From Mobula hypostoma (Eukaryota), in NCBI RefSeq assembly GCF_963921235.1, contig NC_086129.1:5890001-5954000 (forward strand): 64,000 nucleotides of DNA, in the 5' to 3' direction. Shown here piece after piece: positions 7,578-36,661 of the stretch. A program made the translations under genes and the position numbers. The first letter of the stretch is position 1. The number at the start of each line of letters is the position of its first letter. The notes below the pieces were generated by a model. That model saw nothing but the letters and a program-made list of their open reading frames with translations. It was not told the origin of the DNA and made no database searches.

Positions 7578-9649
7578 CTAACGTTTCATGCGTTTCAGAA
7601 TCCGATTCATTGGGTATTTCACCACATTCTTCAGTTCCTCTCGGAATTTGCTCTGGGTCAGGACGTAAATACACGTGTTGGTGCAGGAACTGAGAACCTG
7701 CAGCATTTCCGCTGCCTGCTGTCTGATGTAACGGGGATCCGTGACAGAATAAACAGAACTCCTTGAAATCCGTCTATAGATAAAAAATGCCACGTATGTT
7801 GCCCACAACACTATGAAACAACCGGTTATGCTGAAGAGCAAAACGATAGATTTGTGTTGGTTCTCCATCTCCCGGTCCCTGTCATTCTCTCCACTCTTTT
7901 GTCCCCGGAGCCCCCTGCGGGCTCGACTGGCCGCTAGAATCCGCCTGACAGTCAGGATATTGAACAGCAACATCAGAAAGAATGGGACACAAGGGGTTAA
8001 AATTAGGTGAAACATCTCAATTGCCGCCCATGAGGGAGAGTTTGTGAAGCTTGGTGTATAAACACAATCCCAGGGAACACCATCAATTATTTCTCCAGGC
8101 CAGTATGCAAAGCCCCAGGGGACAGTCACCAAACCGGCCAGCACACTCACTGTCCCGATAACCACAGCCGCCGTTCTCTCGGTGCAATATCTTGTTTTCA
8201 GCTTCTCACAGCAAATAGCCACAAATCGATCGACGGTGAAAGCGACAGTCAGCCAGACTGAGGCCGCAGTGCTCGCAGAAATCAACCATAGACAGAGTCT
8301 GCACACAGGAGTGATGAACAGGAATGATCATAAGACCATAAGACCATAAGACAAAGGAGCAGAAGTAGGGCATTCGGCCCATCGAGTCTGCTCCGCCATT
8401 TTATCATGAGCTGATCCATTTTATCCTATTTAGTCCCACTGCCCCGCCTTCTCACTATAACCTTTGATGCCCTGGCTGCTCAGATACCTATCGATCTCTG
8501 CCTTAAATACGCCCAATGACTTGGCCTCCACTGCTGCCCGTGGCAACAAATTCCACAGATTAACTACCCTCTGACTAAAAAAAATTCTTCGTATTTCTGT
8601 TCTGAAAGGGCGCCCTTCAATCCTGAAGTCATGCCCTCTCGTACTAGACTCCCCCATCATGGGAAACAACTTTGCCACATCCACTCTGTCCATGCCTTTT
8701 AACATTCGAAATCTTTCTATGAGGTCTCCCCTCATTCTTTTAAACTCCAAGGAATACAGTCCAAGAGCGGACAAACGTTCCTCATATGTTAACCCTCTCA
8801 TTCCCAGAATCATTCTCGTGAATCTTCTCTGTATCGGGGAAAATAAATCATTACAGTCCACCCCAGCAGCGGATCGAAGATAACGGCCAGGAGATCGGCC
8901 ACTGCCATTCCCACCAGGTAGCGAGTGACACATTTGGCGAGACCGCACTTTCCCCGGGACAGGATCACAATCGCCACCAAGTTCGCTGGAATAGAGACAG
9001 GGAACAGCAAGTTGAGAAAATACTGAGCAGAAGCGAATGCGGCAGTTTGAGGGGATCCTGTAATATTTCCACTTTATTGTTGCATTTAGCGCTGGGATGG
9101 TCGAGTGAGGGCGCAGAGCTGGCGGGAATAGAGAAGAAGTTTACACAATAAAAGTCAATATGATCTGAATACTGATTCCTTACTGATGAGCGAAATGTGA
9201 CGTGGCAACGGAAAGATAAAACTGGGTAACTACCTCCTCAGAATTAATACTAGATGGGTGGTCTGGATGAAATGAATACATCCGGATGCTAATGGCTGGA
9301 TTCCTCCAGTAGACAAGACCAAAAGCAGAGAGCCGAAAAATTCATTATTAATTACAAAACGCCGGAAGAACGCTGCCTGACCCGCTCAGTCCCGCAGAAA
9401 GTGGCCAAATTGTTTTTAGATCTAAATCCCATCATCTACAGTCCCGGTGTTTCCTCTCCATTCCTGAAATGCGGAATACTGGAACTGGAATGAGAGAGTT
9501 AAAACCAGCGGAAGAATCAAACACAACATCGGAATTAAACTTCAACCTCCACCCACGGCAGCTGATACTGCGGCTTACCGGGAATTAAAAAACACAGAAA
9601 TAAAAGGATAGTAAACTTCTCGAATCCGCCAGATGACTGGATACACCAT
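7578..9649 (-). pseudogene. GPR139-like orphan GPCR, gene A (disabled). Exon 1 9649-9579; exon 2 8985-7578, interrupted by CR1
   Basis: Exon 1 MVYPVIWRIREVYYPFISVF... with a gtaagc donor is 71 nt versus 70 in gene B (extra T in a T6 run). Acceptor tccag|CG AAC. Exon 2 has 7TM sequence with DRF and NTCIY. A 503-bp CR1 sits at 8330-8832. Removing both lesions gives a 323-aa ORF. Confidence 0.9.
8330..8832 (-). mobile_element. 5'-truncated CR1 LINE inserted in exon 2 of gene A
   Basis: QRRFTRMILGMRGLTYEERLSALGLYSLE...FFSQRVVNLWN; (tcttatgg)n tail; flanked by GAT repeats (atc at 8327-8329 and 8833-8835). Confidence 0.92.
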
Positions 9650-9699
9650 TTCAGTGAAAATCTGTGATTTCTAATGCTCCTGCATTCACAGCTCCGGCA

Positions 9700-9790
9700 G
9701 ACAGCTGATGCATTCCAAGCGGCCCTGAGTTATACAGAGGATCTGTCTCCAGAGATACGGTTATACACCTCACTAACTTTCTTCGTTACA
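9700..9790 (-). promoter_or_regulatory. Core promoter of gene A with an altered TATA box (TATAAC, 9734-9729)
   Basis: Near-identical to the gene B promoter, which has TATAAAT at the same position. Confidence 0.55.
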
Positions 9791-10057
9791 GTTGCTTGAA
9801 CAAACACTTTAATTCAATACCATTGTCTCGATTGTGAATACTGGGGCGATCGGAGAGAAATACAACAAAATTCTTTGTCATTACCTCAGCAGCGACTCTG
9901 GTGCAAATAGACCAGTAGATTTACTTTCAAAGACTGAGTTTCGTCACGAAGCAGCTACACTTACAGATTTCATCTTTTTGTTGGCGAATTATTCATCTCT
10001 GAACGGAAACCAGCAACAGTGAACGGTCCCTACCATTTTGAACTGTCCTTCAGTCCT

Positions 10058-10206
10058 NNNNNNNNNNNNNNNNNNNNNNNNNNNNNNNNNNNNNNNNNNN
10101 NNNNNNNNNNNNNNNNNNNNNNNNNNNNNNNNNNNNNNNNNNNNNNNNNNNNNNNNNNNNNNNNNNNNNNNNNNNNNNNNNNNNNNNNNNNNNNNNNNNN
10201 NNNNNN
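10058..10206. other. Assembly gap (N run)
   Basis: Run of N; the paralogous arm has a (GT)n microsatellite at the equivalent position (17666-17718). Confidence 0.99.
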
Positions 10207-10992
10207 TTCTATGTTATAGTGACTGTCCTGTTGTGCATACTATTTGTTATTAGTTACTATAAATTGCATATTGCATATTTAGACAGAGACACAACGTAAA
10301 GATGTGTACTTCTCATGTATATGAACGATGTAAGTAATGAAGTCAATACAGTTCCAAATACGCAAACACTGTCAAGTCAAACTAGGGTTTCCAGAAAGTA
10401 TCGGGACCGAGAGGCAAAAGAAAATAAAATTTTAAAGTGATACAAGAATCCACTGGTAGACGGGGGAGCCGGCAGCATCACAGTGTCAGTCCAGGAGCGG
10501 CGCTGGAATCTGCGGGAACGTTAAATAACTTCAGAGACTGTTTGATGAAAAAGCGCTCTGCTGTCTCTGTGTTTTACATTAGCGTGAGCCTCACGTCACG
10601 GGGATCATCGCGCGCGGGCGCTTCTGGGAAATGGCGCGAGGTGGAAGAGCTCGGGAACATTCGGGAGGGGTCGCATATAAAAAAATAAAAGCAGGAAAAA
10701 GCAAAAGTTGTTTTGTCATTGAGTGGAATCTAGTTAAGAGCCTTCGGGTAGACGCATTCAATCCCTTTCAAGTGGGGAAGCTGCACATGTTCAAAGAACA
10801 AAAGAAATACGACTTGACACTGAAAAAAAACTGGTTGATAGTGAAAAACTGGTTGACCGGGAAACTGGAGGACCAGGAAACAAAATTCTGGGAGCTTTGA
10901 GCTGGAACAGCAGGAGCAATAACTTGGAATCCTGAAAAAGGAAGAAAATCAAGATGAGATAAAACGACATCAAAGCATCATTACAAAGTTGT

Positions 10993-12128: not shown

Positions 12129-15100
12129 ATGAAAAAGTTCTACTTACCTTCTTACCTGTGAACAGCCTGCAGAGGAAATGAACATGACTGATCAAGCTAT
12201 TGGTAAATCAGTTGAGCAACTCAAGGTAGAGCGAACGATAGCAAAAAGATTATTTTCGCGTCTGGTCAACAGTATTACCAGCACCTATGAAGACGTGTCT
12301 GAAGAGGAGCTCAGAGTCAGTTTCAATAAACTCACAACAGAAGCTGAGAAAGTCATGGAAGCCAGTGATGATGCGGAGGCCGGATTCACTGCAGAACTGG
12401 AGGCAGAGCTGAGCGCAGAGGAAGTAGCTGTGTTAACTGAACAGCAAAAAGCCGACCTGGCAAAGACGGCAAACGAGTGTGAGTTGAAACTAAAGAAGGT
12501 CGGAAGAAGAAGCCTAATCCAGGTGACACTTTGGACCAACTTTGGAAATGTTGAGTTGTTCACAGCACTACAAACAGCAGAGGATGAGTGTGAAGACGTC
12601 GCTGCTGTACAACACGATGGCAACCAGGAAGCGTGTGAGTTCATGCTTAACCACCCGCAAGGACTGGTAAGGACAGCGAAGGAGGTGCATGGACCGTAGA
12701 AACGATGGATCCCGCCAGGGGATCAGAAGGACCTTCAGAATCACCTAAAGGGGCTCGAGCTGCAGATCACCAAGTTGGTTTCCAAGAAGGCCCACTTCAT
12801 GCAGGCAGGGAGAAAGGTGGATGATGAAAGACTAACAACGACGGCGTGGACTTTTCCTCTAATTTTCCCACGCCAGCCATCAGATTGAAACCGACAGCCC
12901 TTCCCAAGTTTACTGGCAGAAAACGTGATTTTCACAGGTGGAGAAAGGACTGGAAGGTACTCCAGAAGCAGGGAGAGCCGACCGGTTCATTGGAGGTGAA
13001 AAAAGGTTCAACTACTGGACAGTCTTGACGACAAAATCAGACAAGACCTTCGCCTTACTACTTATAACACCGCAGATGACATCTTCCGTGTTCTCGAAAA
13101 CCGCTATGGAAATCAAACGTGCATTGCTATTGAAATAGTGGAAGAGTTACAGTAAATGCCAGCTGTCAGAAATCATCAGTCACTGAAAATGGTGGAATTA
13201 TTTCAAGCTGTGGAGAAGGCACTTCAAGACTTGAGTGACGTTGGAGACACGGGTGCTGTCAAAAACCCGCTGGTGACAAAATGAATTGAAAGTAAACTTC
13301 CAGAAACTCAAAAAGGAATGGCTAGTCTATGTCACTGACTCGAAAAATGCTGTGGCACCAGATAATCGGTTTGACAGTCTTTTGGAATTCCTCAAAGGGC
13401 GAGAGAACATATATGAGCAGCTCGAGCAACTGAGGGATGAAGAGCCAAGTAGAAGAGAAACCAGGGCTGAGCCAAGACATGCCAGAACCAAGTCCCCCAA
13501 GTCAGGCGACGACCATGCAGGGTTTGTCGTCTGCGGTGATGGAAAGCACAAAAGGAAGCTCTACTTTTGCAAACAGTTTCGAGCGCTAAAGCTACCAGAG
13601 AAAAAGGCCGCAGTAAGAAAGTTGGGGGCATGCAAGAAGCGTCTCGAGGTTCATGATGACAGTTCATACTGCAAACCAGCTTATCTGTGTAAAAACTAAG
13701 ACTGCAAGGATGGGACACTCCTGAGCATCACTACTATCTGTGCCCCAATGCCGAAATAAAGAAAAGCAGCGCAGGTCACAAAAAGAGCAGATTTGGTCCA
13801 GAAGACGATAAAGGCAGGAAGAAATATACAGAGGATCAAGAGGAGTTCTTCAGCAAACTTTCACCAGAATTGTCCAAACAATGTCGCGATGTATTTTCAA
13901 ACGCTGCAGCCAGAGCCTTCAGCACTGTGAAAGATAAATCGGGCCTTCTGATGGCAAGTGGATTGTAAAAGCTGCCAGTGATTATGATGCTTCTTCTGGT
14001 CACAGCTAATCCTGGACAAAAAATGGGGACGTTAATTGACTTGGCTTCAGACACCAATTATATAACCCACAAGGCTGCAAGCAGACTGAACCTCAGAAGT
14101 GAGGAAATCGCTCTCGTTGTCCATGGAGTCGGGGGGATGAAGGTTCAAGTGGAGACAAAGCGGTACCTTCTAAAAATCAGAGTGAACACTCCCAAGGGCA
14201 CTCTCAAATCACACCAATTGGTTTGTTATGGACTAGGCAGCATTGAAAATGTCTACAAATATGTGACACCGAAGCAACTGCAGAAATTCTTCCCAGACAT
14301 GCAGTTTGACGAACTTGTGAGACCCAGAGGAATAAGTTTACTCATAAGTCAAAGAGAAGGTCAGCCAGCGCCTCAGAGAAGCAGAGCTGTTGGAGACCTC
14401 GTGCTGTGGGACGGACCACTGGGGAAGATGTTCGGAGGAGCACACCCTGGTCTCTTTGAGGAGCTGTCTGTGTTTGCTCACATGTACAAGATACATTTTG
14501 CAAGGTCAATGAGAGCGGCGCTGTGATGTAGGAGGAGCTCACCGGCAGAGTCCCAGAGCAACTTCCGCCAAACAAACAGGATGACATCAATCTCCAGGAG
14601 TCAGGTAGGTCAGGCACTAACCTGGTCTTCCGAGAGTGGTGGAAGTGGGATAGTATTGGCGCAGCATGCGAGCCAAAATGCGGGGGTTGTCTTTGCGGAA
14701 ACTGTCAGCCAGGCGGCAAAGGAATGACTCTTGCTGAGGAGAGGGAACTTGAAGTTGTAAGAAGAGGCCTCACCTATGTCACAGAGAACCACCACAGAAA
14801 GGAAGCACATTGGCACCCCAGATATTCTTGGTTAGAGGACCCAGCTTCCTTGCCAAACAATAAAAGAACAGTTGAGGCAACATTTCTCAGGACGGAAAAG
14901 CAACTAGCCAAAGAACCCGAGTGGAAAGCTGCCTACACTGCTCACGTGCATGACATGGTCGATCGTGGGGCTGCAATGAAATTGTCCAAATACACCGTCA
15001 TCAACTGGAACGGGCCAGTCTGGTACGTGAGTCACCTTGTTGCTCCGAATCCGCACTCTGTCACGACCCCAGTGAGACTCGTGTGGAACAGCAATGTGAG

Positions 15101-16328
15101 CTTCAACGTCCTGCTAATGAAAGGTCCAGATATCCTCAACCAGATTCGCACTGTCCTACTGAGATTCAGGGGTGCAGTATACGCTGCTCTGGTGACATAA
15201 AAAGGATGTACAATTCGGTTTGGTTGGAAGATCGAGAAGTGCACCTGCACAGGTTCCTCTGGCGAGACTCCGAGGACGAGGAGCTGGGGGAATATGCAAT
15301 CACAAGAGTGAACATCGGAGATAAATCAACAGGGTGCATTGCACAGTTAGCAATGCGCGAAACTGCTAACCTCCCTCCTTTCACCCACCTCAAAGAGGAG
15401 CGGCAGATGCTCCAGCACGACAGCTACGTTCATGACATTGTCACACCCCACAACAACCTTGACCAGCTGAAATCCATCACAGCGAATGTGGAGCAGACTC
15501 TAAAGGCCGGAGGTTTCAAGCTCAAGCCTTGGATCTTTTCTGGGCAAAGTGGGAGGAAAGAGTGCAAAGACAAGCTGGAGAAGTTCAAGGCAGAAGCCAT
15601 GGTCTTGCCAAACCAAATGCACGATGATGACAACAAGGCACTTGGCCTGGGCTACATAGTAAAGGAGGACAAACACCATGTCATGATTTCAATCAACTTC
15701 TCGAAGAGAAAGCAAACAATGAGACTTGGCCAAGACCTTCTACAGGAGCAAGTCAGAGACCAGACGTCAAACCCCCTGACAAGAAGAGAACTGCTCAGCC
15801 AAGTATCAGGGCAATATGACCCAGTTGGCCTGGTAACTCCTGCTGAGCAGAAGGGATCTATTCTGGTACGAAGGGCGTTCCAAGAGGCAAAGGGCGAAAG
15901 ATGTCCAGTCAAAGACACATTGGACATCGCACCCTCAGATGGCCTCAGGGGGGATGCAATTAAGCTCTTCGAAGAGTACGTTCAACTTGGCAAGGTAAAG
16001 TTCTCCAGTGCACTGACTCCCCCATGCGTCACTAAGGAACCCTGGGCAATCACGTTCTCTCATGGAAACTAGCACGCCTACGGAGCAGTGATGTACCTAA
16101 GGTGGTACTCGGACCGCACGCTGTTTATTTCTAAATTCCAAAACAAACTGTGACAAACTAATAGGCACCTTGCTACTAAACTATTGTTCCTTCAGCAAGG
16201 TCAACCGTCCTGAAACCAATCCAGATTTTAAATTTTCCTTATTCAAAGGTTCAGAAACAACACGTTTTCCACTCTCTCAATAAAATTTACCTCACCAGTG
16301 ACAGGTACAGAATGAACCCAACACTCTT

Positions 16329-16975: not shown

Positions 16976-17044
16976 GCAATCTATGCAACTGTTTCTGGCT
17001 GCCTTTCTGCCTGCTTGACCTATCTATTTGTCAGTTTGCCTATC

Positions 17045-17046
<2 letters not shown>

Positions 17047-17090
<44 letters not shown>
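17047..17090. repeat. (CT)n microsatellite
   Basis: Direct reading. Confidence 0.95.
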
Positions 17091-17096
<6 letters not shown>

Positions 17097-17665
17097 CCTC
17101 TGTCCTCTTTCTCCTCTCTCCCCCTCTCTCTCTCTTCCAACAATTTACCTCATGACTGTCTTTCTCTCGTTCATTTCCAGCCGCAATGCACACATTCGTC
17201 TGCCAATTTTCAGTATTTTTTATATTATTTAACATTCTGCCCATTCCTTTACAGACTGAAATATTTATTCTCGATTTCGTTGGACCTTTGATAGATTTAC
17301 GATGCCCATTAAAGACTGTTACATCAGCGACATGACACACAAAATGCTGGAGGAACTCAGCAGTGTTCCTTGTGTTGCCCCGGATTTCCAACATCTTCAG
17401 ATTTTCTCGTGTTTGTACACTAGCAACGTGCTCATTTTACCGTTTCCATCCTGATCTGGGTCTCTCTATTGTATCTTTGTTCAAATCTGTGTTTGTGTAT
17501 TTCGAATTGTATTGACTTCATTACTTATATCCTTCATCTACATGAGAAGTAAAAATTTTTACGTTATGTCTCTGTCTAAATATGCAATTTATGGTTACTT
17601 ATAATACAGATTATGTTTAACAGGGCAGTCACTATAACATAGAAATACATTTGTGCAATAGTTTC

Positions 17666-17686
17666 TGTGTGTGTGTGTGAGTGTGT

Positions 17687-17718
<32 letters not shown>
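17666..17718. repeat. (GT)n microsatellite
   Basis: Direct reading. Confidence 0.95.
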
Positions 17719-18051
17719 CCAGGAAGAAGCTGAAGGACTGAAGGACGGTACAAAATGGGAAACTGCAGGGACAGAGGTAGGGATCGGCCAGCGTCGCAGG
17801 TCTCCCTTCAGAGATGAATAATTAAAGCCAGCAAAAAGATGAAATCTGTAAGTGTAGCTGCTTCGTGACAAAGCTCAGTCTTTGAAAGTAAATCTACCGG
17901 CCCATTTCCACCAGAGACACTGTTGAGGTAACGCTAAAGAATTTTGATTTATTTGTCTCCAATCGCCCCAATATTTACAATAGAATTAAAGTAACTGGAA
18001 CTAAGAAAGTTAGTGAGGTGTATAACTGTATCTCTGGAGACCGATCCTCTG

Positions 18052-18058
18052 TATAAAT
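18052..18058 (+). promoter_or_regulatory. TATA box of gene B
   Basis: TATAAAT 85 bp upstream of the ATG, with an initiator-like catcag about 25 bp downstream; flanks conserved in gene A. Confidence 0.6.
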
Positions 18059-18136
18059 CAGGGCCGCTTGGAATGCATCAGCTGTCTGCCGGAGCTGTGA
18101 ATACAGGAGCAACAGAAATCACAGATTCTCACTGAA

Positions 18137-18206
18137 ATGGTGTATCCCGTCATCTGGCGGATAGAAGGCGTTTACTATCCTTTTATTTCAGCCTTTGGGA
18201 TCCCCG
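18137..18206 (+). CDS. GPR139-like orphan GPCR gene B, coding exon 1 (MVYPVIWRIEGVYYPFISAFGIP)
   Basis: ATG, 70 nt, phase-1 donor G|gtaagc. Resembles the VYY...GLPAN start of TM1 in GPR139. A homologous exon is present in gene A. Confidence 0.85.
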
Positions 18207-19575
18207 GTAAGCCGCGGTGTCAGCTGCCGTGGGTGGATGTTGGAGTTTAATTCGGATGATGTGATTGATTCTGCCGCTGGTTTAAACTCTCACATTCCAG
18301 TGCCGGTATTCCGCATTTCGGGAATGGAGTGGAAACACCGGGACTAGAGATGCTGGGATGTCTATCTGAAAACAAACCGCTGCAGGAATTCAGCGAATCA
18401 GCCACTTTCTGTGGGACTGAGCGGGTCAGGCAGCGTTCTTCCAGCGGGTTGTGATTAATAATGAGATGTTCGCCTCTCTGCTTTTGGTCTTGTCGAAGCT
18501 GCACTTCACTTGCAGATATTGTGTTTATACAGCCCGCGGAGCTCATGCCAATTGATCGTCTGTATTTGAATGTGAGTGATTGTCTACTTAGGAGCAACAA
18601 TCAAACCATCGACTGCAGTAACACTGCAGGAAATGTGTTGTAACACGAAACAGTTGTGGATTTTAATAACTGTGTGCGATATGACGGAATATAAAGCAGA
18701 TGATGGACAACACAATGAATTTGATGCTGAGTGAATTAACACAACCGAGGTGGTGCTTCATAGCCATCAATACTGTGAAATGTATTGTATCGTATCTACA
18801 CCTGACATTGTTCCGGACATCTGACTACGACACCGAGTTTGAATTCCTCTCCCCTCCTCCCTTGATGGGTTCAGTGGGAGGCGTCATGTCTGCCTGTGAG
18901 GTTGCGTCAGGCTGCGCTGTATTTGTTGGAATCAGTCAATGTTCTGTTGTAAAGTCAGTGAGTTGGCAAATGTTGAAATAGGAAACAAACTCGGAGAATG
19001 CTGGAAACACTGAGCCCCAAGCAGCTGGTATGGGAAGAGAAACCGGTTAACACTTGTGTCAGGGGTCTCTCGGAGAACAGTTCTGAAAGAGAGATACTTT
19101 AACTAATTTCCACATATTTTGTTTTGTCTGGATGAGTGTTTCCAGCATTTCCTGTTTTTGTTCCGTCTTTCGGCTGTTCTGTCGCTTACAGGGATCTCCA
19201 TGGAAGTTGTTGATTGTCTAATGGAAGAATCCCGCCATCAGCGTCCGGATTTATTCATTTCATCCAGACGAGACGCAGAAGGTACCGATAGAAATTGTTC
19301 CATCAAGTATTGGCCCTGAGGAGGTAGTTACCCAGTTTTAGCTCTCCGCTGTCATTTCACATTGAGGAAATCAGTGAGGGAACCGTATTCAGACCATATT
19401 GACTTTATTTTACTGTGTAAACTCCTTCTCTGTCCCGGCCAGCTCTGCGCCCTCTCTCGACGCTCCCGCCGCTAAATGTAACAATAAAGTGGAAATATCA
19501 CAGGATCCCCTCAAACTGCCGCATTAGCTTCTGCTCTGTAATTTCTCAACTTGCTGTTCCCTGTCTCTCTTCCAG

Positions 19576-20483
19576 CGAACTTGGTGGCGATTGTGATCCT
19601 GTCCCGGGGAAAGTGCGGTCTCGCCAAATGTGTCACTCGCTACCTGGTGGGAATGGCAGCGGCCGATCTCCTGGTCGTTATCTCCGATCCGCTGCTGAGG
19701 TGGACTGCTCAGATTTATTTTCTCCGATCATTCCTGTTCATCACTCCTGTGTGCAGCCTCGGTGAATGGTTGATTTTTGCGAGCACGGCGGCCTCAGTCT
19801 GGCTGACTGTCGCTTTCACGGTCGATCGATTTGTGGCTATTTGCTGTGAGAAGCTGAAAACAAGATATTGCACCGAGAGAACGGCGGCTGTGGTTATCGG
19901 GACAGTGAGTGTGCTGGCCGGTTTGGTGAGTGTCCCCTGCGGATTTATATATGGGCCTGTGGTAATAATTGATGGTGTTCACTGGGGTTGTGTTGCTACA
20001 CCGAGCTTCACAAACTCTCCCTCATGGGCGGCATTTGAGATGTTTCACCTCATTTTAACCCCTTGTCTCCCATTCTTTCTGATTTTACTGTTCAATATTC
20101 TGACTGTCAGGCGGATTCTAGCGGCCAGTCGAGCCCGCAGGGGGCTCCGGGGACAAAAGAGTGGAGAGAATGACAGAGACCGGGAGATGGAGAACCGACG
20201 CAAATCCATCGTTTTGCTCTTCAGCATAACCGTTAGTTTTATATTGCTGTGGGGAACACAAATGGTATTTTCCATCTATAGACGGATTTCAATGAGTTTT
20301 TTTTATTCTGTCACGGATCCCCGTTACATCATAAGACACACATCGGACATGCTGCAGATTCTCAGTTCCTGCACCAACACGTGTATTTACGCCCTGACTC
20401 AGAGAAAGTTCCGAGAGGAACTGAATAATGCGTTGAAATACCCACTGAATCAGATTCTGAAACTCTTGAAGCATAAGAAATAA
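19576..20483 (+). CDS. GPR139-like orphan GPCR gene B, coding exon 2; spliced join(18137..18206,19576..20483) gives an intact 325-aa 7TM protein
   Basis: Polypyrimidine tract and tccag acceptor; ANLVAIVIL, LVGMAAADL, SVWLTVAFTVDRFVAIC, TM5 LTPCLPF, TM7 SSCTNTCIY, helix 8 KFREEL; no stops. Confidence 0.92.
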
Positions 20484-20583
20484 ATGTTGTAAAGTATTAC
20501 AATTCAGCTGCCTTCATGCTCCCTATTCTATCCCCCACTTGTGGGGAAATGGAAACAATGTGATGAACAGAGTTACAAAACAT

Positions 20584-20800
20584 ACACGAGAAAATCTGCA
20601 TCCGCTCGAAATACAAAACAACACACACAAAATCAGATCCTGATGAAGGGTCTCGCCACGAAACCTCGACTGTTTTCATTTTTCCTCACAGAAAATGCTA
20701 GAGGAACTCAGCAGGCCAGGCAGCATCTATGAAAAAGAATAAACTTTCGACGTTTCGGGCCGAGACCCTTCTTCAGGTTCCAGTTAACTTTTTACTCTTT
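20584..20800. mobile_element. Penelope-derived short repeat containing two opposite-facing hammerhead-like motifs (about 20636-20672 + and 20745-20780 -)
   Basis: cctgatgaagggtctcgccacgaaacctcgactg (+) and cctgaagaagggtctcggcccgaaacgtcg (-); homologous copy at about 7400-7570 beside gene A. Confidence 0.7.
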
Positions 20801-22099
20801 TCCCGTTTTGTGTGCGTTGCCTTAGTTACAAAATAACTGTTTACAGCTGATCTCGACGGCATCACTGGCCTCACTATCCCAGAGAAATCCCCTTTGCTCC
20901 TCTCGTCCCACCCTGTTATATTGAATCTTGGGGTGAACCTGTTTCCCCTGCTTCCCGGTTCTGACTAAACTGCCTGAACTTGTGGTATATTTTCGTCTCT
21001 ATCAACCTCTCCTGATCCCGTCAATACCCGTCCTTTCTTTCATGATCTTTTGTTTCTCCTCCTCTATACCTGCAGATTTCCCTTCTCACTGTCAACTTGA
21101 ACTATCTTTCTGTAAGAGTATTTTCCTGTTTTCCATTTCAAGACAAAGTCGCGTCACCTTCACTTGTTTCTCTGTGAGAGATGGAGATGCGAGTGCTGAG
21201 GGCGCGAATGAGACATCGCGAGGAAAGGGCGCGCGGGAGAGCACGTGAGTGCTGAGGGCGCGAATTAGACATCGCGAGGAAAGGGCGCGCGGGAGAGCAC
21301 GTGAGGGAGAGGGCGCGAGGGAGATGATGCCACGGAGATGACGCCACGGAGATGACGCTGGAGTGAGGGTAATGCAGAGGGCGGGAGGGAGAGGGAGCGG
21401 GCGATGGTGCGCGCGAGTGAGAGCGACAGGAGGAGACATCGCGAGGGCGCGAAGGTGAGCACGTGAGGGAGAGCGGGCCGGGGATAGGACACGAGGAAGA
21501 TGTCGCAAGATTGAGCGCCAGGGAACGGGAGTGTGAGAGAGGCAGAGAAAATAGAGTGAGAGAACAGAGAGATAGTGATGCGACTGAGACATCGTGAGGG
21601 AGTCAGGGAGAGAGAAAGGGTGGGGGGAGAGAGAGAGAGAGGGAGAGGAGCGGGAGGGAGGGGGACAGAGAGAGAGGGAGGGGGAGAGGGAGAGGGAGAG
21701 AGAGAGAGAGATAAATAGATGGTTAGATAAATAGTCAGATAGGTAGAAAAAAACAGTCCGAGGAACATTGCCGGATCTGTGGTTTTACTCTTTCACAGAG
21801 ATCGGCTTCTTTAGTGATGATAAGTATTCTTTTGAATTATGTACAGCTAACTACTGTAGACATTAGTTGTTTTTTGTTCTATATTAAAATCCTACGAGGT
21901 CTAACAAATTGCGTAGTTTCAATATGTGTGCAGTCTCCTTTGTTTGCGAATGCATCAGTAAATTTCCTGAGCTGAATCAAAGAAGAATACAATGAATGAA
22001 TTTTCATACAATGTTCATTACAAACAGGCTATAAGAAATCACATAAATACACGGGGATGTAAAGATATGAATCACACGTAGCAAACACTTTAGCGGGGT

Positions 22100-23460: not shown

Positions 23461-24119
23461 TTAGACCATTGGGGGACACAGACCACATGCATTTAAATGT
23501 GATGTTTAATCTGCTGGCACCGTACTGTAAGAACAGAGATCTTAACAACATCTGACCCGTACTGTAAGGGAACGGAATGGTCTATCTCTGGTATAAGCAT
23601 ATCCTGCACATGTGACTGCACAAGAATAATCAACATTTGACTACAGGGACAGTGAACTTTACAATATCTGGACCTTCACCACCAGGACACGGAACAATAA
23701 AACTCACAGCACTGTGCAGTGAGCACACGCTCCTGTACACACCCAGCACTGTACTCCACCGTTAAACACTTCAAGGACAGGGAACTGTACAAACGTGATA
23801 TTGTACTACAATTCATGAACACTATCTATCCCCTCAATCCCACTGGGTATCTCTCAGGATGTAACAGAGAGTTGACAAAGGAGAACCTTGAATGATGTGT
23901 GCTTCAATTTACAAAGGTTTTTGAAATGCTGCTGGCAGAAAGAAGAACAGAAACGTAGGCAGGTTCTGTAAAGTTGGAAAGAGTAGTGTGTGGCTGTAAT
24001 TTCCCCAACATTTACTCCGATTGTCTTAGTGTCGAGGCTCCGAGGAGTGGAATTTGTTGGCATTCGGGAAATACTTACCAGCATTTACAGCCTATACTAT
24101 GTCAGCTTGTGCAGATTCG

Positions 24120-25860: not shown

Positions 25861-25901
25861 CACGCGCGCGTGTCTGTGTGTGTGAGAGAGAGAGAGAGGG
25901 G

Positions 25902-25954
<53 letters not shown>

Positions 25955-25975
25955 GGGGGGGGGGCGGGAGAGAGA
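25861..25975. repeat. Compound (CG)/(TG)/(GA)n microsatellite
   Basis: Direct reading. Confidence 0.9.
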
Positions 25976-26184
25976 GTTTTCCCGTACTTGAAAGAATGAG
26001 ACAGAGAATCTGAGAGTTCCCATTTAGATTCAGGAATGTTTCCAGTAACTGGTGTGTCTCGAAAGTGGGGTCACAGTGATGGGACGAATATTCAGATCAG
26101 AACAAAATAATTTACGCAGCAGGTAGTGAACCTTTGGAGCTCACAACCCACTCTTGTGTTTGAGAGCGACATTTACAAATGTAA

Positions 26185-27665: not shown

Positions 27666-27669
27666 GTCA

Positions 27670-31426: not shown

Positions 31427-32116
31427 NNNNNNNNNNNNNNNNNNNNNNNNNNNNNNNNNNNNNNNNNNNNNNNNNNNNNNNNNNNNNNNNNNNNNNNNNN
31501 NNNNNNNNNNNNNNNNNNNNNNNNNNNNNNNNNNNNNNNNNNNNNNNNNNNNNNNNNNNNNNNNNNNNNNNNNNNNNNNNNNNNNNNNNNNNNNNNNNNN
31601 NNNNNNNNNNNNNNNNNNNNNNNNNNNNNNNNNNNNNNNNNNNNNNNNNNNNNNNNNNNNNNNNNNNNNNNNNNNNNNNNNNNNNNNNNNNNNNNNNNNN
31701 NNNNNNNNNNNNNNNNNNNNNNNNNNNNNNNNNNNNNNNNNNNNNNNNNNNNNNNNNNNNNNNNNNNNNNNNNNNNNNNNNNNNNNNNNNNNNNNNNNNN
31801 NNNNNNNNNNNNNNNNNNNNNNNNNNNNNNNNNNNNNNNNNNNNNNNNNNNNNNNNNNNNNNNNNNNNNNNNNNNNNNNNNNNNNNNNNNNNNNNNNNNN
31901 NNNNNNNNNNNNNNNNNNNNNNNNNNNNNNNNNNNNNNNNNNNNNNNNNNNNNNNNNNNNNNNNNNNNNNNNNNNNNNNNNNNNNNNNNNNNNNNNNNNN
32001 NNNNNNNNNNNNNNNNNNNNNNNNNNNNNNNNNNNNNNNNNNNNNNNNNNNNNNNNNNNNNNNNNNNNNNNNNNNNNNNNNNNNNNNNNNNNNNNNNNNN
32101 NNNNNNNNNNNNNNNN
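31427..32116. other. Assembly gap (N run)
   Basis: Run of N. Confidence 0.99.
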
Positions 32117-32709
32117 CAAATGCACAGAGACACGGACACACACATACGCAAACAACCACACTTTCTTATCTCCGTTTCCAGCTCTCTGCCGTGTTCTTTG
32201 ACAGATGCGGGGTGATAGGATTAGACTACTGAGTTTGATGACCATGAGTTATGGTTAGGGATAGGTCCTGAACGAGCCCCCAGATGATCTGATTGTGACT
32301 AAGTCACTGAAGACGTTGGAGGGTTGCGTGGATGTCAACGTGTTTATTCATCACCACAGACATTTTCTTGGAGACCCTCTCGGTAGAGTCCCCCGAGCAC
32401 AAACTGCATTGCGAGTTTATAATCTGGAGGAGAATGGTAACAGTAGCTGATTCAATACAATCTCAAAAGCTACAATGACATAATTTACTTCAACATTCTG
32501 TGTTTGAGAAGTGGTTCCTTTGAAGTACATATTTACAGTAAAAGCACATTTAATTGTTAAGACACCTCAGAGGGTTCAGTCACCTTTGTTGGGACAAACT
32601 AACTCCCACGAATGTCTAAATAGCAATTCAGTAAATTAAACACAATCTATCACCGCGGGGATTGCAGCTGTCTGAGGTAATCGATTTGTAAATACTGTAA
32701 TGTGAAACC

Positions 32710-32800
32710 CTTTATTTTTAAATCTGTTGAAATCTGTCCCGGTGGAGCGCTAAATGGTATTAAAACCCCAGGCATGTGTTGCCTCAACATTTCACTCAGA
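32710..32800 (+). promoter_or_regulatory. Putative core promoter of gene C
   Basis: TATTAAAA at 32758-32765, initiator-like ttcactc near 32791, ATG at 32847; spacing matches gene B. Confidence 0.5.
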
Positions 32801-32846
32801 GAGACCGCACAGGGGGACAAGTCACTGCACAGAGACAATATCTGCA

Positions 32847-35800
32847 ATGTTGGATCGGTACGAGCGTGTGGCGAAAATGTTGTACGTGTTCATTGCCGTC
32901 ATTGGAGTTCCTGGTGAGTGAGCACAGCAATTCATGTTTGGTATTTCTGTGTGTTAACCGGCGTGAACCTGTTTATAACCATTTTATAAGCTTCCCACTT
33001 GATGACCATTACAAAAATAACCGATAGAGATATCGATCCCGTCAGCTCAACACTCTCATGCTCAATCCGTATTGATAAGTGGAATTAAGCCTCTGTCTGT
33101 CTTTTAACTCACGGGATCGACTCGAACGATGTTCTTTCCTTTAATAACACCATGTACATATTTATCCCAGTGTAGGGGAGGGGAATCTCCCCGTAAAGGG
33201 GTTGACTGCGGGGGGGGGGGGGGGGTGGTTACATTGTGAAGTACACTGTATAGAACATAGAACATAGAATAGTACAGCACAGTACAGGCCCTTCGGCCCA
33301 CAATGTTGTGCCGAACCTCAAACCCTGCCTCCCATATAACCACCACCCCCACCTTAAATTCCTCCATATACCTGTCTAGTAGTCTCTTAAACTTCACTAG
33401 TGTATCTGCCTCCACCACTGACTCAGGCAGTGCATTCCACGCACCAACCAGTCTCTGAGTAAAACACCTTCCTCTAATATCCACCTTGAATTTCCCACCA
33501 CTTACCTTAAAGCCATGTCCCCTTGTATTGAGCAGTGGTGCCCTGGGGAAGAGGCGCTGGCTATCCACTCTATCTATTCCTCTTATTAGCTTGTACACCT
33601 CTATCATGTCTCCTCTCATCCTCCTTCTCTCCAAAGAGTAAAGCCCTAGCTCCCTTAATCTCTGATCATAATGCATACTCTCTAAACCAGGCAGCATCCT
33701 GGTAAATCTCCCCTGTACCCTTTCCAATGCTTCCAAATCCTTCCTATAGTGAGGCGACCAGAACTGGACATAGTACTCCAACAGTGGCCTAACCAGAATT
33801 TTATAAAGCTGCATCATTACATCGCGACTCTTAAACTCTATCCCTCGACTTATGAAATCTAACACCCCATAAGTTTTCTTAACTACCCTATCCACCTGCG
33901 AGACAACTTTCAGGGATCTGTGGACATGCTCCCCCAGATCCCTCTGCTCTTCCACACTACCAAGTATCCTGCCATTTACTTTGTACTCTGCCTTGGAGTT
34001 TGTCCTTCCAAAGTGTACCACCTCACACTTCTCCGGGTTGAACTCCATCTGCCACTTCTCAGCCCACTTCTGCATCCTATCGATGTCTCTCTGCAATCTT
34101 CGACAATCCTCTACACTATCTACAACACCACCAACCTTTGTGTCGTCTGCAAACTTGCCAACCCACCCTTCTACCCCCACATCCAGGTCTTTAATAAAAA
34201 TCACGAAAAGTAGAGGTCCCAGAACAGATCCTTGTGGACACCACTAGTCACAATCCTCCAATCTGAATGTACTCCCTCCACCAGCACCCTCTGCCTTCTG
34301 CAGGCAAGTCAATTCTGAATCCACCTGGCCAAACTTCCCTGGATCCCATGCCTTCTGACTTTCTGAATAAGCCTACAGTGTGCAACTTTGTCAAATGCCT
34401 TACTAAAATCCATATAGATCACATCCACTGCACTACCCTCATCTATATGCCTGGTCACCTCCTCAAAGAACTCTATCAGGCTTGTTAGACACGATTTGCC
34501 CTTCACAAAGACATGCTGACTCTCCCTGATCAGACCATGATTCTCTAAATGCCCATAGATCCTATCTCTAAGTATCTTTTCCAACAGCTTTACCACCACA
34601 GAAGTAAGGCTAACTGGTCTATAATTACCCGGACTATCCCTACTACCTTTTTTGAACAAGGGGACAACATTCGCCTCCCTCCAATACTCCGGTACCATTC
34701 CCGTGGACAACGAGGACATAAAGATCCCAGCCAAAGGCTAAGCAATCTCTTCCCTCGCCTGGTGGAGCAGCCTGGGGAATATTCCGTCAGGCCCCGGGGA
34801 CTTAACCGTCCTAATGTATTTTAACAACTCCAACACCTACTCTCCCTTAGTATCAACATGCTCCAGAACATCAACCTCACTCATATTGTCCTCACCATCA
34901 TCAAGTTCCCTCTCATTGGTGAATACCGAATAAAAGTATTCATTGTGTATCTGAGATATTGGTCAGAGAGAACCCCTGGTCCTGTGTTTCACCCCTCCCT
35001 GTGGAGATCACAGTCGGATCCCGCTGACTGTTGGTCAATAATTGGGTCCGATCACCTGGATCAGAGTCCTTGGATCTGCTGACACGAGTTATCGAATTGA
35101 ACTGCGCTGTGGAATTAATCCTTAACGGACGCGCTCAGCCTCCGGTTACTAAGTTGTCGCTACTTTCCCCCTGAGATCCGTCGTAAATCGGGGCAGCGTT
35201 TCGTCATGAAGACGGTCTCGACCCGCATCAAGAGTTTGTTCAATTCCATGGATGCCGCCTGCCCTGCTGAGTTGCACCAGCATTTTGTGCGTGTTCCTCC
35301 CCTCTGTATCGCTTCTCGGCCCCCTCAGATGCTGAGTTTCCGGAGACCTGGTGAGTCACGGTTAAATCGGTGAAACCGGGCCCATCAGCGACTGGAATCG
35401 GGATCAGCACCGATTGTTCTTCTTCATGTCGCTCGTTTTTATCGCCGACGATTGCCGACTCATCATCTTATCTGCACACTGAAGAAGGCAGTTTAGAGAC
35501 AGCGTGACCCGTGTCTATTGTTAGATCAGTAGCCGTTCACAGAGTCTAGCACTCCTGAGGTTCAGCTGAAGCCCGATCCCGGGTCAATTCCCGGAAAATA
35601 AGTTCAGTTATGCCCACTGTCTGCCCTCTCTCTCTGTCTCCCCCTCTCCAGTGAATTTAGTGGCGATTGTGCTCCTGTCCCGGGGAAAGTGCGGCCTCTC
35701 TACCTGCACCACTCGCTACCTGGTGGCCATGGCAACGGCCGATCTACTGACCATCGTCACACAGGTCATTTTGTATCGAATTAATGTGTATTACTTCCCC

Positions 35801-36661
35801 TGGAGTTTTCTGAGCATCACCCCTGTGTGCAGTGTTATTTAAGTCCTGACGTTCGCAGCCACAGACCGTTCTGTCTGGTTCACCATCACATTCACCTTTG
35901 ATCGGTTTGTCGCCATTTGCTGCCAAAAGGTGAAAACAAAATATTGCACCGGGAAAACTGCGGCTGTGGTTCTGACAACAACCGGCGCAATGTGCTTTCT
36001 GAAACACGTCCCCCGATACTTCACACTCGAACCCAGAGTGATCATCGGCGACGCACTGTGGTTCTGTGTGATGAAAGACAATTATTTCACTGACCCCGGG
36101 TGGGTAGGATATGACTGGTTCGATACGGTTTTAACTCCGTTCCTCCCTTTCGCTGGGATCCTGCTGCTCAACGCTCTGACAGTCAGGCACATTGTAGTGG
36201 CCAGTCGGGTCCGTAAGAGGCTGAAGGGTCAGAGCAAGGGGGAGAACCGCAGTGACCCGGAGATGGAGAGCAGGAGGAGGTCTGTGGTTTTACTCTTCAC
36301 CCTCTCCGGCAGCTTCGTCCTCCTGTGGATGACATACCTTGTAAATTTCATTTATTATCAGGTCTCAGGAAAAGGATTCGATTTCAATGATTCTGAACGG
36401 ATCTTTCAGCTCGTCGGGTTTTTGCTGAGGGATTTCAGCTGTTGCATCAACACATTTATTTACGCGGTGACTCAGTCAAAATTTAGGGAGCAGCTGATCA
36501 GCGCGGTGAAATATCCGGTCACCTCGGTGCTTCAGTTGATTAATAATGAGTACAGTGTCTCCAGTCCGGACTGTGGGTCCTCACAATCTCCGCCTGATCT
36601 CCCAGATATTAATCCCGGGCGGATTGTTCCATCGACCGGCAGGTACGGGGCATTAGGATAG
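32847..36661 (+). pseudogene. GPR139-like orphan GPCR gene C: join(32847..32913,35652..36661) with one in-frame TAA at 35840-35842
   Basis: Exon 1 MLDRYERVAKMLYVFIAVIGVP with G|gtgagt donor; acceptor ctccag|TG AAT; NLVAIVLLSRGKCGL, TFTFDRFVAICC, CINTFIY, KFREQL; frame continuous across the stop. Confidence 0.88.
33250..34944 (-). mobile_element. Young 5'-truncated CR1 LINE (RT domain) in the intron of gene C
   Basis: YRPVSLTSVV, YMDFSKAFDKV (34309..34734); KFADDTKVGG...FTQRLVGAWN (33104..34204); (ttctatg)n tail. Confidence 0.93.

What the first reader, a model, noticed from the sequence alone, without database searches (positions are those of the whole stretch)
7578..36661. Candidate undescribed receptor repertoire: a birth-and-death cluster of GPR139-like orphan GPCRs
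Seen: three paralogues, and probably a fourth, share a TATA-type promoter, a tiny first exon, a phase-1 intron in TM1, an N-terminus of about 10 aa with no N-glycosylation sequon, DRF in place of DRY, and NTxIY in place of NPxxY. One is intact and two are recently disabled by different lesions. Established: mammalian GPR139 and GPR142 are single-copy receptors activated by aromatic amino acids (L-Trp, L-Phe), and cartilaginous fishes have very few canonical odorant receptors. Inference: clustering, fast turnover and pocket diversification resemble chemosensory or immune-sensing families, so this may be a lineage-expanded amino-acid/peptide-sensing system rather than true GPR139 orthologues. 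Function is not shown by the sequence.
Basis: partly seen in the sequence, partly recalled or inferred. Interest (0 to 1): 0.85.

Follow-up and report, generated by a model that had tools for sequence, protein, structure and literature searches.

The report
Expanded orphan GPCR family in rays
The window holds three genes (one intact, two recently broken) of a very large, shark-and-ray-specific family of orphan cell-surface receptors that databases call "GPR139", although they are not GPR139; the family evolves like a smell or taste receptor repertoire, but no expression or ligand data exist.

Summary
Three two-exon class A GPCR genes are present.

- **B** (18137-20483, +) is intact.
- **A** (9649-7578, -) is broken by a 506-bp LINE tail in exon 2 and by a +1 frameshift in exon 1.
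- **C** (32847-36661, +) has one in-frame TAA.
- A fourth copy was not found. Both assembly gaps lie upstream of exons and touch no coding sequence.

A and B are an inverted, head-to-head segmental duplication. C belongs to a different, older subfamily.

The family is large: 2337 database proteins, the best 120 all elasmobranch. Human GPR139 is only a remote relative (42 bits, about 20% identity), and its agonist-pocket residues are not kept.

In a maximum-likelihood tree the elasmobranch genes form one clade. Its sister is a conserved gene that appeared once per species in amphibians and sturgeon. A third conserved orphan lineage, which sharks also keep, lies outside both.

Family variability sits in the extracellular half, while the microswitch residues and intracellular face are nearly invariant. 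A and B differ mostly in that half (omega about 1.45 against 0.6-0.7).

My reading is a ligand-diverse receptor repertoire evolving by birth and death, probably chemosensory. Function is not shown. No paper describing it was found. The scan has noted at least 26 similar findings elsewhere in this genome.

The parts
18052..18057 (+). TATAAA motif 85 nt upstream of gene B's ATG. The duplicate A has TATAAC at the same offset.
   Evidence: This is a motif only; no transcription start data exist.
18137..18206 (+). Gene B exon 1: ATG + 23 codons + 1 nt, followed by a GTAAGC donor. It encodes the 4-residue N-terminus and most of TM1.
   Evidence: exon-1 HMM E 1.4e-10
18207..19575 (+). Gene B intron (phase 1). 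It holds a 720-bp stretch (18495-19214) that is absent from A.
19576..20483 (+). Gene B exon 2 (TM1 end to helix 8, stop TAA). The spliced product is an intact 325-aa receptor.
9579..9649 (-). Gene A exon 1: 71 nt, one base more than B, which shifts the frame.
7578..8985 (-). Gene A exon 2. It is open for 299 codons once the insertion is set aside; stop TAG at 7580-7578.
8328..8833 (-). 5'-truncated CR1-like LINE 3' end (reverse-transcriptase C-terminal tail plus an 8-nt microsatellite tail), inserted in sense orientation into A's exon 2 at the extracellular end of TM2 / ECL1, just before TM3.
   Evidence: five other copies in the window, sharing the 3' end
32847..32913 (+). Gene C exon 1: ATG + 22 codons + 1 nt, followed by a GTGAGT donor.
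32914..35651 (+). Gene C intron (phase 1). It holds an antisense LINE reverse-transcriptase fragment at 33104-34734.
35652..36661 (+). Gene C exon 2. It has a single in-frame TAA at 35840-35842 (codon 86, start of TM3) and a C-terminal tail about 37 aa longer than B's.
5229..10369 (-). Arm A of the inverted segmental duplication.
   Evidence: Non-coding divergence from arm B is 14%.
17489..22000 (+). Arm B of the inverted segmental duplication. A and B lie head to head, with their ATGs 8.5 kb apart.
10058..10206 (.). Assembly gap in A's far upstream region. It lies outside all exons, and A/B collinearity holds across it.
31427..32116 (.). Assembly gap 731 bp upstream of C's ATG. It lies outside all exons and its content is unknown.

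Best explanation
The region is a small cluster of an elasmobranch-specific multigene family of class A (rhodopsin-like) orphan GPCRs. RefSeq labels these genes 'probable GPR139' only because GPR139 is the nearest named human protein.

ORIGIN (shown). The family is the massively duplicated elasmobranch counterpart of a gene that bony vertebrates (amphibians, sturgeon) showed once per species in the searches. A sister orphan lineage, also conserved, is retained in sharks as well.

HOW IT GROWS AND DECAYS (shown here). Copies arise by local segmental duplication in DNA rich in transposable elements; A and B are an inverted, head-to-head pair. Copies die by LINE insertion, frameshift or nonsense mutation. 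A and C were lost after long periods under constraint.

HOW THE RECEPTOR WORKS (inferred).
- Each receptor has an almost absent (about 4 aa), unglycosylated N-terminus. The ligand must therefore bind in the transmembrane/extracellular-loop pocket, which favours a small molecule or short peptide.
- The intracellular face is nearly invariant: ICL1, DRF, ICL2, a charged ICL3 motif and helix 8. The members should therefore share one transducer.
- The pocket-lining positions are hypervariable and differ between young paralogues, so each member should be tuned to a different ligand.

My committed reading is a ligand-diverse sensory repertoire, most likely chemosensory (nose, taste or solitary chemosensory cells), with gene B a working member. 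The family assignment and evolutionary mode carry about 0.9 confidence. The chemosensory role carries about 0.4.
For: - **Gene models and lesions:**
- **Family size and range:** 2337 proteins at E<=1e-5, the top 120 from at least 17 shark and ray species, many sharing contigs. There are 106 clusters at 50% identity with E<=1e-30. Deep branches are all elasmobranch.
- **Tree** (IQ-TREE, LG+C20, 71 rows):
  - vertebrate clade 100/100;
  - elasmobranch clade 96/84;
  - sister to the amphibian + sturgeon gene 94/91;
  - separate gnathostome-wide lineage, including Scyliorhinus, Stegostoma and Pristiophorus, 97/93;
  - A and B sisters 92/85;
  - C with the Heptranchias subfamily 100/99.
- **Structure:** AlphaFold2 model with pLDDT 87 and pTM 0.86 shows 7TM + helix 8, with TM1 starting at residue 5.
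- **Family variability:** 1.83 bits in the extracellular half against 0.95 bits in the intracellular half, Mann-Whitney p 1e-17.
- **Invariant switches, variable pocket:** N1.50, D2.50, R3.50, P5.50, W6.48, N7.49 and Y7.53 are invariant or nearly so. Positions 3.32, 3.33, 5.43, 6.51 and 6.55 each take 6 or more residue types.
- **A against B:**
  - no replacement in 87 codons of TM3/ICL2 and cytoplasmic TM5/ICL3, despite 5 synonymous changes;
  - extracellular half 33 replacement against 4 silent changes, omega about 1.45; intracellular half 20 against 11, omega 0.6-0.7; Fisher p 0.02;
  - coding divergence 8.7% with 1 small indel, against non-coding 14% with 10 indels per 1709 bp (P 0.02 for so few coding indels).
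- **Conserved core kept:** B, A and C retain 79, 75 and 73 of 82 conserved positions.
Against: - There is no expression, ligand or signalling evidence of any kind.
- Higher variability in the extracellular half is common to most GPCR families. It does not by itself mark chemoreceptors.
- The omega of about 1.45 in the extracellular half comes from a single gene pair, one of them a pseudogene, and is only marginally above 1. Relaxed constraint on A could contribute.
- Published catshark work that examined the 50 most abundant and specific genes of a 'brain & olfactory epithelium' RNA-seq library reported no GPCR among them (PMC11979771). This argues weakly against strong nasal expression.
- The family census rests on automatic gene models, many with wrong N-termini.
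- Holocephalans were not examined.
Confidence: 0.6

Rival explanations
1. The receptors detect internal signals (neuropeptides, hormones or metabolites) and are expressed in brain or endocrine tissue. They would have expanded together with families of endogenous ligands, as some invertebrate peptide-receptor families have.
For: - The nearest structural and sequence neighbours are peptide-type class A receptors: GPR139, neurotensin, CCK, neuromedin-B, galanin and opioid receptors.
- The bony-vertebrate counterpart is strongly conserved, 66-74% identical across amphibians. That is typical of a receptor with a fixed endogenous ligand.
Against: - Hundreds of paralogues with hypervariable pockets, a high pseudogene share and recent lineage-specific duplications are unusual for vertebrate endogenous-ligand receptors.
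- No matching ligand family is known.
Confidence: 0.15
2. The receptors are an immune or barrier-surface sensing repertoire, analogous to formyl-peptide, chemokine-like or MRGPR families. They would be expressed in leukocytes, skin, gill or gut.
For: - The clusters sit in fast-evolving, transposon-rich regions. A PRY-SPRY (B30.2) exon lies in the same window at 59373-60239.
- In Chiloscyllium, one 90%-identity cluster with a family member joins a RING-domain protein and long fused gene models. This hints at TRIM-like neighbours.
- The catshark's canonical olfactory-receptor families are reported to be most highly expressed outside the nose (PMC11979771), so large receptor families there need not be nasal.
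Against: - No expression data exist.
- The PRY-SPRY exon is 23 kb away and may be unrelated.
- The RING fusion may be a gene-model artefact.
Confidence: 0.15
3. The copies are mostly non-functional passengers. The family would have been amplified passively by segmental duplication in a large, repeat-rich genome, and the apparent diversification would be decay.
For: - Two of the three copies here are pseudogenes.
- The overall A-B dN/dS is about 1.0.
- The surroundings are saturated with LINEs and an LTR element.
Against: - Replacement changes are absent from 87 core codons while silent changes occur there.
- Coding indels are far fewer than in the flanks.
- B keeps an open 325-codon frame and 79 of 82 conserved residues.
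- Subfamilies are shared between sharks and rays with intact microswitches.
Confidence: 0.08
4. The genes are true GPR139 (or GPR142) orthologues that duplicated locally.
For: - RefSeq names them so.
- GPR139 is the top hit in the PDB sequence search and in Swiss-Prot models.
- Like these genes, GPR139 lacks Pro at 7.50 (alignment).
Against: - The score to human GPR139 is only 42 bits, at about 20% identity, whereas GPR139 is described as highly conserved across vertebrates (PMC12208981 abstract).
- The agonist-pocket residues are not kept.
- Closer relatives exist in two other conserved vertebrate orphan lineages.
Confidence: 0.02

Closest known systems
Orphan GPCR of amphibians and sturgeon, seen once per species ('S' lineage; e.g. 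Pleurodeles waltl XP_069092602.1, RefSeq name 'probable GPR139')
   Same: - It is the sister clade of the elasmobranch family (94/91), at 32-35% identity.
- It has the same very short N-terminus and a homologous exon-1-type peptide ending in G-x-P.
- It also lacks Pro at 7.50, with an N-x-C-I-Y motif.
   Different: - Each species yielded one protein, strongly conserved (66-74% identity across amphibians).
- It has DRY rather than DRF, Met/Val rather than Thr at 7.50, and Ser rather than Asn at 1.50.
- Its function is also unknown.
Gnathostome-wide orphan lineage ('L'; e.g. Latimeria XP_005988539.1). It probably corresponds to the 'GPR210' orphans that Rinne et al. 2019 placed near GPR139/GPR142 (PMC6504862).
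   Same: - It belongs to the same strongly supported vertebrate clade (100/100).
- It has a short N-terminus and lacks Pro at 7.50 (NMYLY).
   Different: - It is a conserved lineage from sharks to reptiles, seen mostly once per species.
- Sharks keep their own orthologue (Scyliorhinus, 66% identical to coelacanth), so it is a paralogue, not the source of the expansion.
- It has ERF rather than DRF.
- The mapping to the GPR210 Ensembl identifiers was not tested.
Human/mammalian GPR139 (PDB 7VUG-7VUJ, 9M42)
   Same: - It is a class A receptor and the nearest named and solved relative by sequence and by Swiss-Prot model.
- W6.48 is kept and Pro at 7.50 is absent in both.
   Different: - Identity is only about 20% (42 bits).
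- F3.33, H5.43, R6.51 and N7.38, which bind agonists and L-Trp/L-Phe (PMC5430874), are not conserved.
- GPR139 is a single-copy, brain-expressed gene.
Lineage-expanded class A chemoreceptor repertoires (OR, TAAR, ORA/V1R, T2R) and immune-type expansions (FPR, MRGPR)
   Same: - Large copy number, tandem or inverted local duplicates, and many pseudogenes.
- A conserved signalling face with a hypervariable pocket.
- A short N-terminus, like TAAR and V1R.
   Different: - There is no sequence kinship beyond class A.
- These genes have a two-exon coding region with an intron inside TM1, whereas most such chemoreceptors have intronless coding regions (from my own knowledge).
- There are no glycosylation sequons.
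- Expression is unknown.

Membership tests
Class A (rhodopsin-like) GPCR | Match to Pfam 7tm_1 above the gathering score | tested here: met
   A scores 70.8, B 82.4 and C 38.7 bits against a cut-off of 30.5.
Class A (rhodopsin-like) GPCR | Seven-helix bundle plus helix 8, and the TM3-ECL2 disulfide cysteines | tested here: met
   The AlphaFold2 model of canonical member P0088 has pLDDT 87 and shows 7TM + helix 8. C83 (3.25) and C162 (ECL2) are conserved in at least 90% of members. Foldseek hits have TM-score 0.7-0.8 to many class A structures.
Class A (rhodopsin-like) GPCR | Canonical microswitch residues (N1.50, D2.50, D/E-R-Y, CWxP, NPxxY) | tested here: inconclusive
   N1.50, D2.50, R3.50, P5.50, W6.48, N7.49 and Y7.53 are invariant or nearly so. 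However, Y3.51 is Phe, P6.50 is Thr (45 of 56) and P7.50 is Thr (52 of 56). The family is a variant, not a non-member.
GPR139/GPR142 orthologue | High sequence similarity to mammalian GPR139 (described as a highly conserved vertebrate gene) | tested here: not met
   42 bits, E 6e-10, against PDB GPR139. The CCK-B receptor scores 36 bits. Identity to the rat and human models is 20%.
GPR139/GPR142 orthologue | Agonist / aromatic amino-acid pocket: F3.33, H5.43, W6.48, R6.51, N7.38 (PMC5430874) | tested here: not met
   Only W6.48 is kept. Position 3.33 is F/S/Y/N, 5.43 is L/Y/R, 6.51 is Q/R/K/H/N and 7.38 is S/A/G.
GPR139/GPR142 orthologue | Groups with bona fide GPR139/GPR142 in a tree | not tested
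Two other vertebrate orphan lineages are demonstrably closer.
Elasmobranch 'GPR139-like' expansion (clade E) | Falls inside the monophyletic elasmobranch clade | tested here: met
   Clade E has support 96/84. A and B sit in the Mobula/Hemitrygon subclade (100/99). C sits in the Heptranchias P0035 subfamily (100/99).
Elasmobranch 'GPR139-like' expansion (clade E) | Exon 1 of 22-23 codons + 1 nt ending in G-[VI]-P, with a phase-1 intron before N1.50 | tested here: met
   The exon-1 peptide is shared by 37 of the 120 top homologues.
Elasmobranch 'GPR139-like' expansion (clade E) | DRF and N-T-x-I-Y motifs, and a conserved ICL1 S-R-G-K-C-G-L-S-K | tested here: met
Chemosensory receptor repertoire (functional class) | Large family in local clusters with many pseudogenes | tested here: met
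   for family size. In this window there are 3 genes in 29 kb, 2 of them pseudogenes. As an unchecked lead, 26 notes elsewhere in the same genome fit the search word 'gpr139'.
Chemosensory receptor repertoire (functional class) | Variable ligand pocket on a conserved signalling scaffold | tested here: met
   This feature is suggestive but not specific to chemoreceptors.
Chemosensory receptor repertoire (functional class) | Expression in sensory cells, one or few receptors per cell, and activation by external chemicals | not testable with these tools
   No expression or ligand data were accessible.

The most novel reading that the evidence does not exclude
This family is the unrecognised main class A chemoreceptor repertoire of sharks and rays. 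These animals have only a handful of OR, TAAR and ORA genes. The family would be a fifth vertebrate odorant/tastant receptor family, born from an orphan gene that bony vertebrates kept in what the searches show as one copy per species.
Probability: 0.3. Interest if true: 0.9.

Novelty: new member of a known kind. Interest (0 to 1): 0.62.

Why it matters
Cartilaginous fishes are known for acute chemical senses, yet they have very small canonical olfactory receptor repertoires. The catshark has 2 OR plus a few OR-like genes, and 3 or fewer each of the ORA, TAAR and TAAR-like families (PMC11979771). Only V2Rs are moderately expanded.

A class A family that is hundreds strong, confined to elasmobranchs and carries a diversifying pocket is an obvious candidate to fill that gap. 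Alternatively it could reveal another large sensing system, immune or internal.

The result also gives a clean example of one conserved orphan gene in bony vertebrates against a large birth-and-death repertoire in a sister lineage. That contrast could help find a ligand for the amphibian/sturgeon and 'GPR210'-type orphans.

Finally, it shows that the RefSeq name 'probable GPR139' on these genes is misleading. Ligand predictions should not be carried over from GPR139.

Tried and rejected
- **Fourth copy.** tblastn with B, a family HMM on all six frames and an exon-1 HMM found nothing. The marginal hits at 23876, 24642 and 25764 are not collinear and were rejected.
- **Promoter shared by B and C.** The only shared word is a 10-mer, CAGCTGTCTG, at different positions relative to the ATG. 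About 0.24 such matches are expected by chance, so it was rejected as evidence. C has no canonical TATA.
- **Neighbourhoods in other species.** The look-up of encoding contigs returned no DNA for the Mobula and Heterodontus genes because the files are too large. Clustering elsewhere therefore rests only on shared contigs.
- **Structure searches.** Foldseek against PDB and Swiss-Prot cannot discriminate among peptide-type class A receptors; E-values and TM-scores are nearly flat. The ESM Atlas search added nothing beyond names.
- **Literature.** Eight searches found no description of the expansion. Only the 'GPR210' note in PMC6504862 bears on relatives.
- **Alternative first exon for B.** The N-terminus of Hemitrygon isoform X2 matches 17344-17439. 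The match starts with a motif that is part of an interspersed repeat present elsewhere in the window. It is probably an exonised or mispredicted repeat and was not used.
- **Assembly-artefact duplicate.** Rejected, because A and B differ at 8.7% of coding and 14% of non-coding sites.
- **Not done.**
  - A bona fide GPR139/GPR142 was not placed in the tree, because no non-human sequence was in hand.
  - Holocephalan genomes were not examined.
Full report
**1. What is in the sequence**

ORF listing and Pfam show three rhodopsin-type receptor reading frames, at 7578-8306 (-), 19551-20483 (+) and 35930-36661 (+). tblastn with the middle one (B) recovers the full extent of the other two.
- A, on the minus strand, matches in two pieces (9010-8834 and 8327-7575, 81-86% identity) separated by 506 bp.
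- C matches at 35648-36550 (51% identity) with one stop.

All three open frames are preceded by a polypyrimidine tract and an AG. This puts the exon boundary one base before the codon preceding N1.50 of TM1, so the intron is phase 1.

Canonical homologues begin with a 23-residue peptide of the type M-G-Y-P-V-I-x-Q-I-E-D-I-Y-Y-P-V-L-A-A-I-G-V-P. An HMM of that peptide finds exon 1 of B at 18137-18206 and exon 1 of A at 9649-9579. A weaker match led to exon 1 of C at 32847-32913. Its peptide resembles the first exon of C-type homologues.

Donors are GTAAGC (A, B) and GTGAGT (C). Spliced B is an intact 325-codon gene.

**2. Lesions and gaps**

- **A has two lesions.**
  - A 506-bp insertion at 8328-8833 encodes the C-terminal tail of a LINE reverse transcriptase and ends in an 8-nt microsatellite. 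It has five other copies in the window that share the same 3' end. It is therefore a 5'-truncated CR1-like LINE.
  - One extra base in exon 1 (71 nt against 70) shifts the frame.
  - With the insertion set aside, exon 2 is open for 299 codons.
- **C has one lesion,** a single TAA at 35840-35842 in an otherwise open 358-codon frame.
- **Assembly gaps.** Gap 10058-10206 is 409 bp upstream of A's ATG. A/B collinearity holds across it, with a matching length. Gap 31427-32116 is 731 bp upstream of C's ATG. Neither touches coding sequence. I did not fill them.
- **Fourth copy.** None is detectable. One hidden in the second gap cannot be excluded.
- **Promoters.** TATAAA lies 85 nt before B's ATG, and TATAAC lies at the same place in A. 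C has no canonical TATA. B and C share no upstream motif beyond chance.

**3. Local history**

B 17489-22000 and A 10369-5229 are an inverted duplication, head to head. A BEL/Pao LTR retrotransposon lies between them.

| Measure (A against B) | Value |
|---|---|
| Non-coding divergence | 14.0%, 10 indel events in 1709 bp |
| Coding divergence | 8.7%, one small indel in 967 bp (5.7 expected if neutral, P 0.02) |
| Overall dN/dS | about 1.0 |
| Codons 68-117 and 170-206 (TM3/ICL2, cytoplasmic TM5/ICL3) | 0 replacements, 5 silent changes |
| Extracellular half | 33 replacements, 4 silent; omega about 1.45 |
| Intracellular half | 20 replacements, 11 silent; omega 0.6-0.7 |

The overall dN/dS hides strong heterogeneity. 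The 53 replacements cluster in TM2/ECL1, the top of TM3, TM4/ECL2, TM6/ECL3/TM7 and the C-terminal tail. Using the helix limits of the structure model, the replacement-to-silent ratio differs between the two halves (Fisher p 0.02), and replacement density differs more strongly (p 8e-5).

Polarised against close homologues, 18 changes are A-derived and 12 are B-derived. B, A and C keep 79, 75 and 73 of the 82 positions conserved in at least 90% of the family.

Both A and C were therefore under selection for most of their history and were disabled late.

**4. The family**

B's exon 2 finds 2337 proteins at E<=1e-5. The best 120 are all from sharks and rays, covering at least 17 species of Myliobatiformes, Rajiformes, Torpediniformes, Hexanchiformes, Heterodontiformes, Orectolobiformes, Lamniformes, Carcharhiniformes and Pristiophoriformes. 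Nearly all are named 'probable G-protein coupled receptor 139', and many share contigs. The nearest are Mobula and Hemitrygon proteins (82-86%), so the window comes from a ray of that group.

An exhaustive HMMER scan of 50%-identity representatives gives 106 clusters at E<=1e-30, then a sharp fall. The deepest branches that I named are all elasmobranch.

Human GPR139 is a remote relative: 42 bits, E 6e-10, against 36 bits for the CCK-B receptor, and 20% identity in Foldseek.

Closer relatives exist.
- **An amphibian + sturgeon gene,** 32-35% identical to the family. It returned one protein per species, 66-74% identical among frogs, salamanders and caecilians.
- **A gnathostome-wide gene,** typified by coelacanth XP_005988539.1. 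It has orthologues in Scyliorhinus, Stegostoma, Pristiophorus, sturgeon, bichir, Amia, teleosts, amphibians, turtles and squamates.
- None of these is a true GPR139 either; they score 51-60 bits to it.
- Rinne et al. 2019 noted unnamed orphans near GPR139/GPR142 in gar, coelacanth and fishes and called them GPR210A/B (PMC6504862). This is probably the same group, but I could not map the identifiers.

**5. Tree**

IQ-TREE (LG+C20+F+G4, 71 rows, 324 columns, rooted on invertebrate relatives) gives the following support values.

| Grouping | Support (UFBoot/SH-aLRT) |
|---|---|
| Vertebrate clade | 100/100 |
| Gnathostome-wide lineage, sharks included | 97/93 |
| Amphibian + sturgeon lineage | 100/100 |
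| Elasmobranch expansion as one clade | 96/84 |
| Elasmobranch expansion sister to amphibian + sturgeon lineage | 94/91 |
| A + B as sisters, inside a Mobula/Hemitrygon subclade (100/99) | 92/85 |
| C in another subfamily with Heptranchias proteins | 100/99 |

Because C groups with shark proteins, subfamilies predate the shark-ray split. The expansion is therefore old, still ongoing and lineage-specific. It descends from a gene that appears once per species in the bony vertebrates sampled.

**6. The protein**

An AlphaFold2 model of a canonical member (pLDDT 87, pTM 0.86) shows seven helices and helix 8. TM1 starts at residue 5, and ECL2 forms a beta-hairpin.

B has no N-x-S/T sequon at all. 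None of 42 canonical members has one in the N-terminus, and only one has one in ECL2.

Family entropy is 1.83 bits in the extracellular half against 0.95 in the intracellular half (p 1e-17). ICL1 is almost invariant.

Microswitch residues are invariant or nearly so. Three canonical residues are replaced: Y3.51 by Phe, P6.50 by Thr and P7.50 by Thr.
- Loss of Pro at 7.50 is shared with the two sister lineages and with GPR139.
- Thr at 7.50 is specific to the expansion. DRF distinguishes it from the sister lineage's DRY; the third lineage has ERF.

The positions that bind agonists and L-Trp/L-Phe in GPR139 (3.33, 5.43, 6.51, 7.38; PMC5430874) are hypervariable here. Positions 3.33 and 6.51 differ even between A and B.

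**7. Interpretation**

*Shown:*
- the gene structures and lesions;
- the inverted duplication;
- the size, range and monophyly of the family;
- that it is not GPR139;
- a conserved signalling face with a variable pocket.

*Inferred:*
- ligands bind in the transmembrane pocket, because there is no N-terminal domain;
- members share a transducer and differ in ligand;
- the repertoire is sensory, most likely chemosensory.

Rivals are receptors for endogenous ligands, immune or barrier sensing, and passive amplification. The last is disfavoured by the selection evidence. No expression or ligand data exist. One catshark study saw no GPCR among the 50 top genes of a 'brain & olfactory epithelium' RNA-seq library (PMC11979771), which is a weak caution.

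**8. Novelty**

The genes are annotated in public genomes. No paper in the searched library describes the expansion.

The scan's own index lists 26 notes that fit the search word 'gpr139' in 1204 windows of this genome. This window is therefore one sample of a genome-wide repertoire, not a unique locus.

I class it as a new member of a known kind: a lineage-expanded class A receptor repertoire evolving by birth and death.

Noticed in passing
window 59373-60239 (-): An open frame encodes a PRY + SPRY (B30.2) domain (E 3.7e-17 and 2.6e-20), as in the last exon of TRIM/butyrophilin-type genes. In Chiloscyllium, one 90%-identity cluster with a family member joins a RING-domain protein and long fused models, so TRIM-like genes may neighbour these receptors in other species too.
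   Followed up: partly
window 12178-16072 (+): A BEL/Pao-type LTR retrotransposon remnant (Peptidase_A17 and reverse-transcriptase hits, broken frames) sits between the head-to-head genes A and B, at the centre of the inverted duplication.
   Followed up: partly
window 5438-6620 and 21092-21770: Arrays of a repeat of about 170-180 bp, rich in CT/TC, translate as S-L-S-L-S-P runs. They lie at the outer ends of both arms of the inverted duplication, with related short arrays at 17040-17140 and 25884-25976.
   Followed up: no
window 39330-41000 (+): A LINE whose first open frame carries a GDSL/OSK-type esterase domain (E 4e-13), followed by an endonuclease-like frame. An antisense reverse-transcriptase tail with an ALKBH8_N-like match lies at 38342-39517.
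   Followed up: no
window 17338-17439 (+): This stretch translates to a peptide 63% identical to the N-terminus of a Hemitrygon akajei 'GPR139 isoform X2' model. It starts with a motif that recurs in interspersed repeats at 61232-61257 and elsewhere. That isoform's first exon is therefore probably repeat-derived or mispredicted.
   Followed up: partly
family-wide (alignment A1), ICL3, residues about 206-234 of B: The third intracellular loop carries an unusually conserved charged motif (R-R-G-L-R-G-x-x-x-G-E-N-x-x-D-x-E-M-E-N-R-R-K-S), identical in A and B except two residues. It may be a shared docking or phosphorylation site.
   Followed up: no
RefSeq models P0001-P0021 (Mobula, Hemitrygon): Many automatic gene models of the closest homologues have unrelated N-termini in place of the conserved 23-residue first exon. 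Public protein sets therefore misrepresent TM1 of this family.
   Followed up: partly
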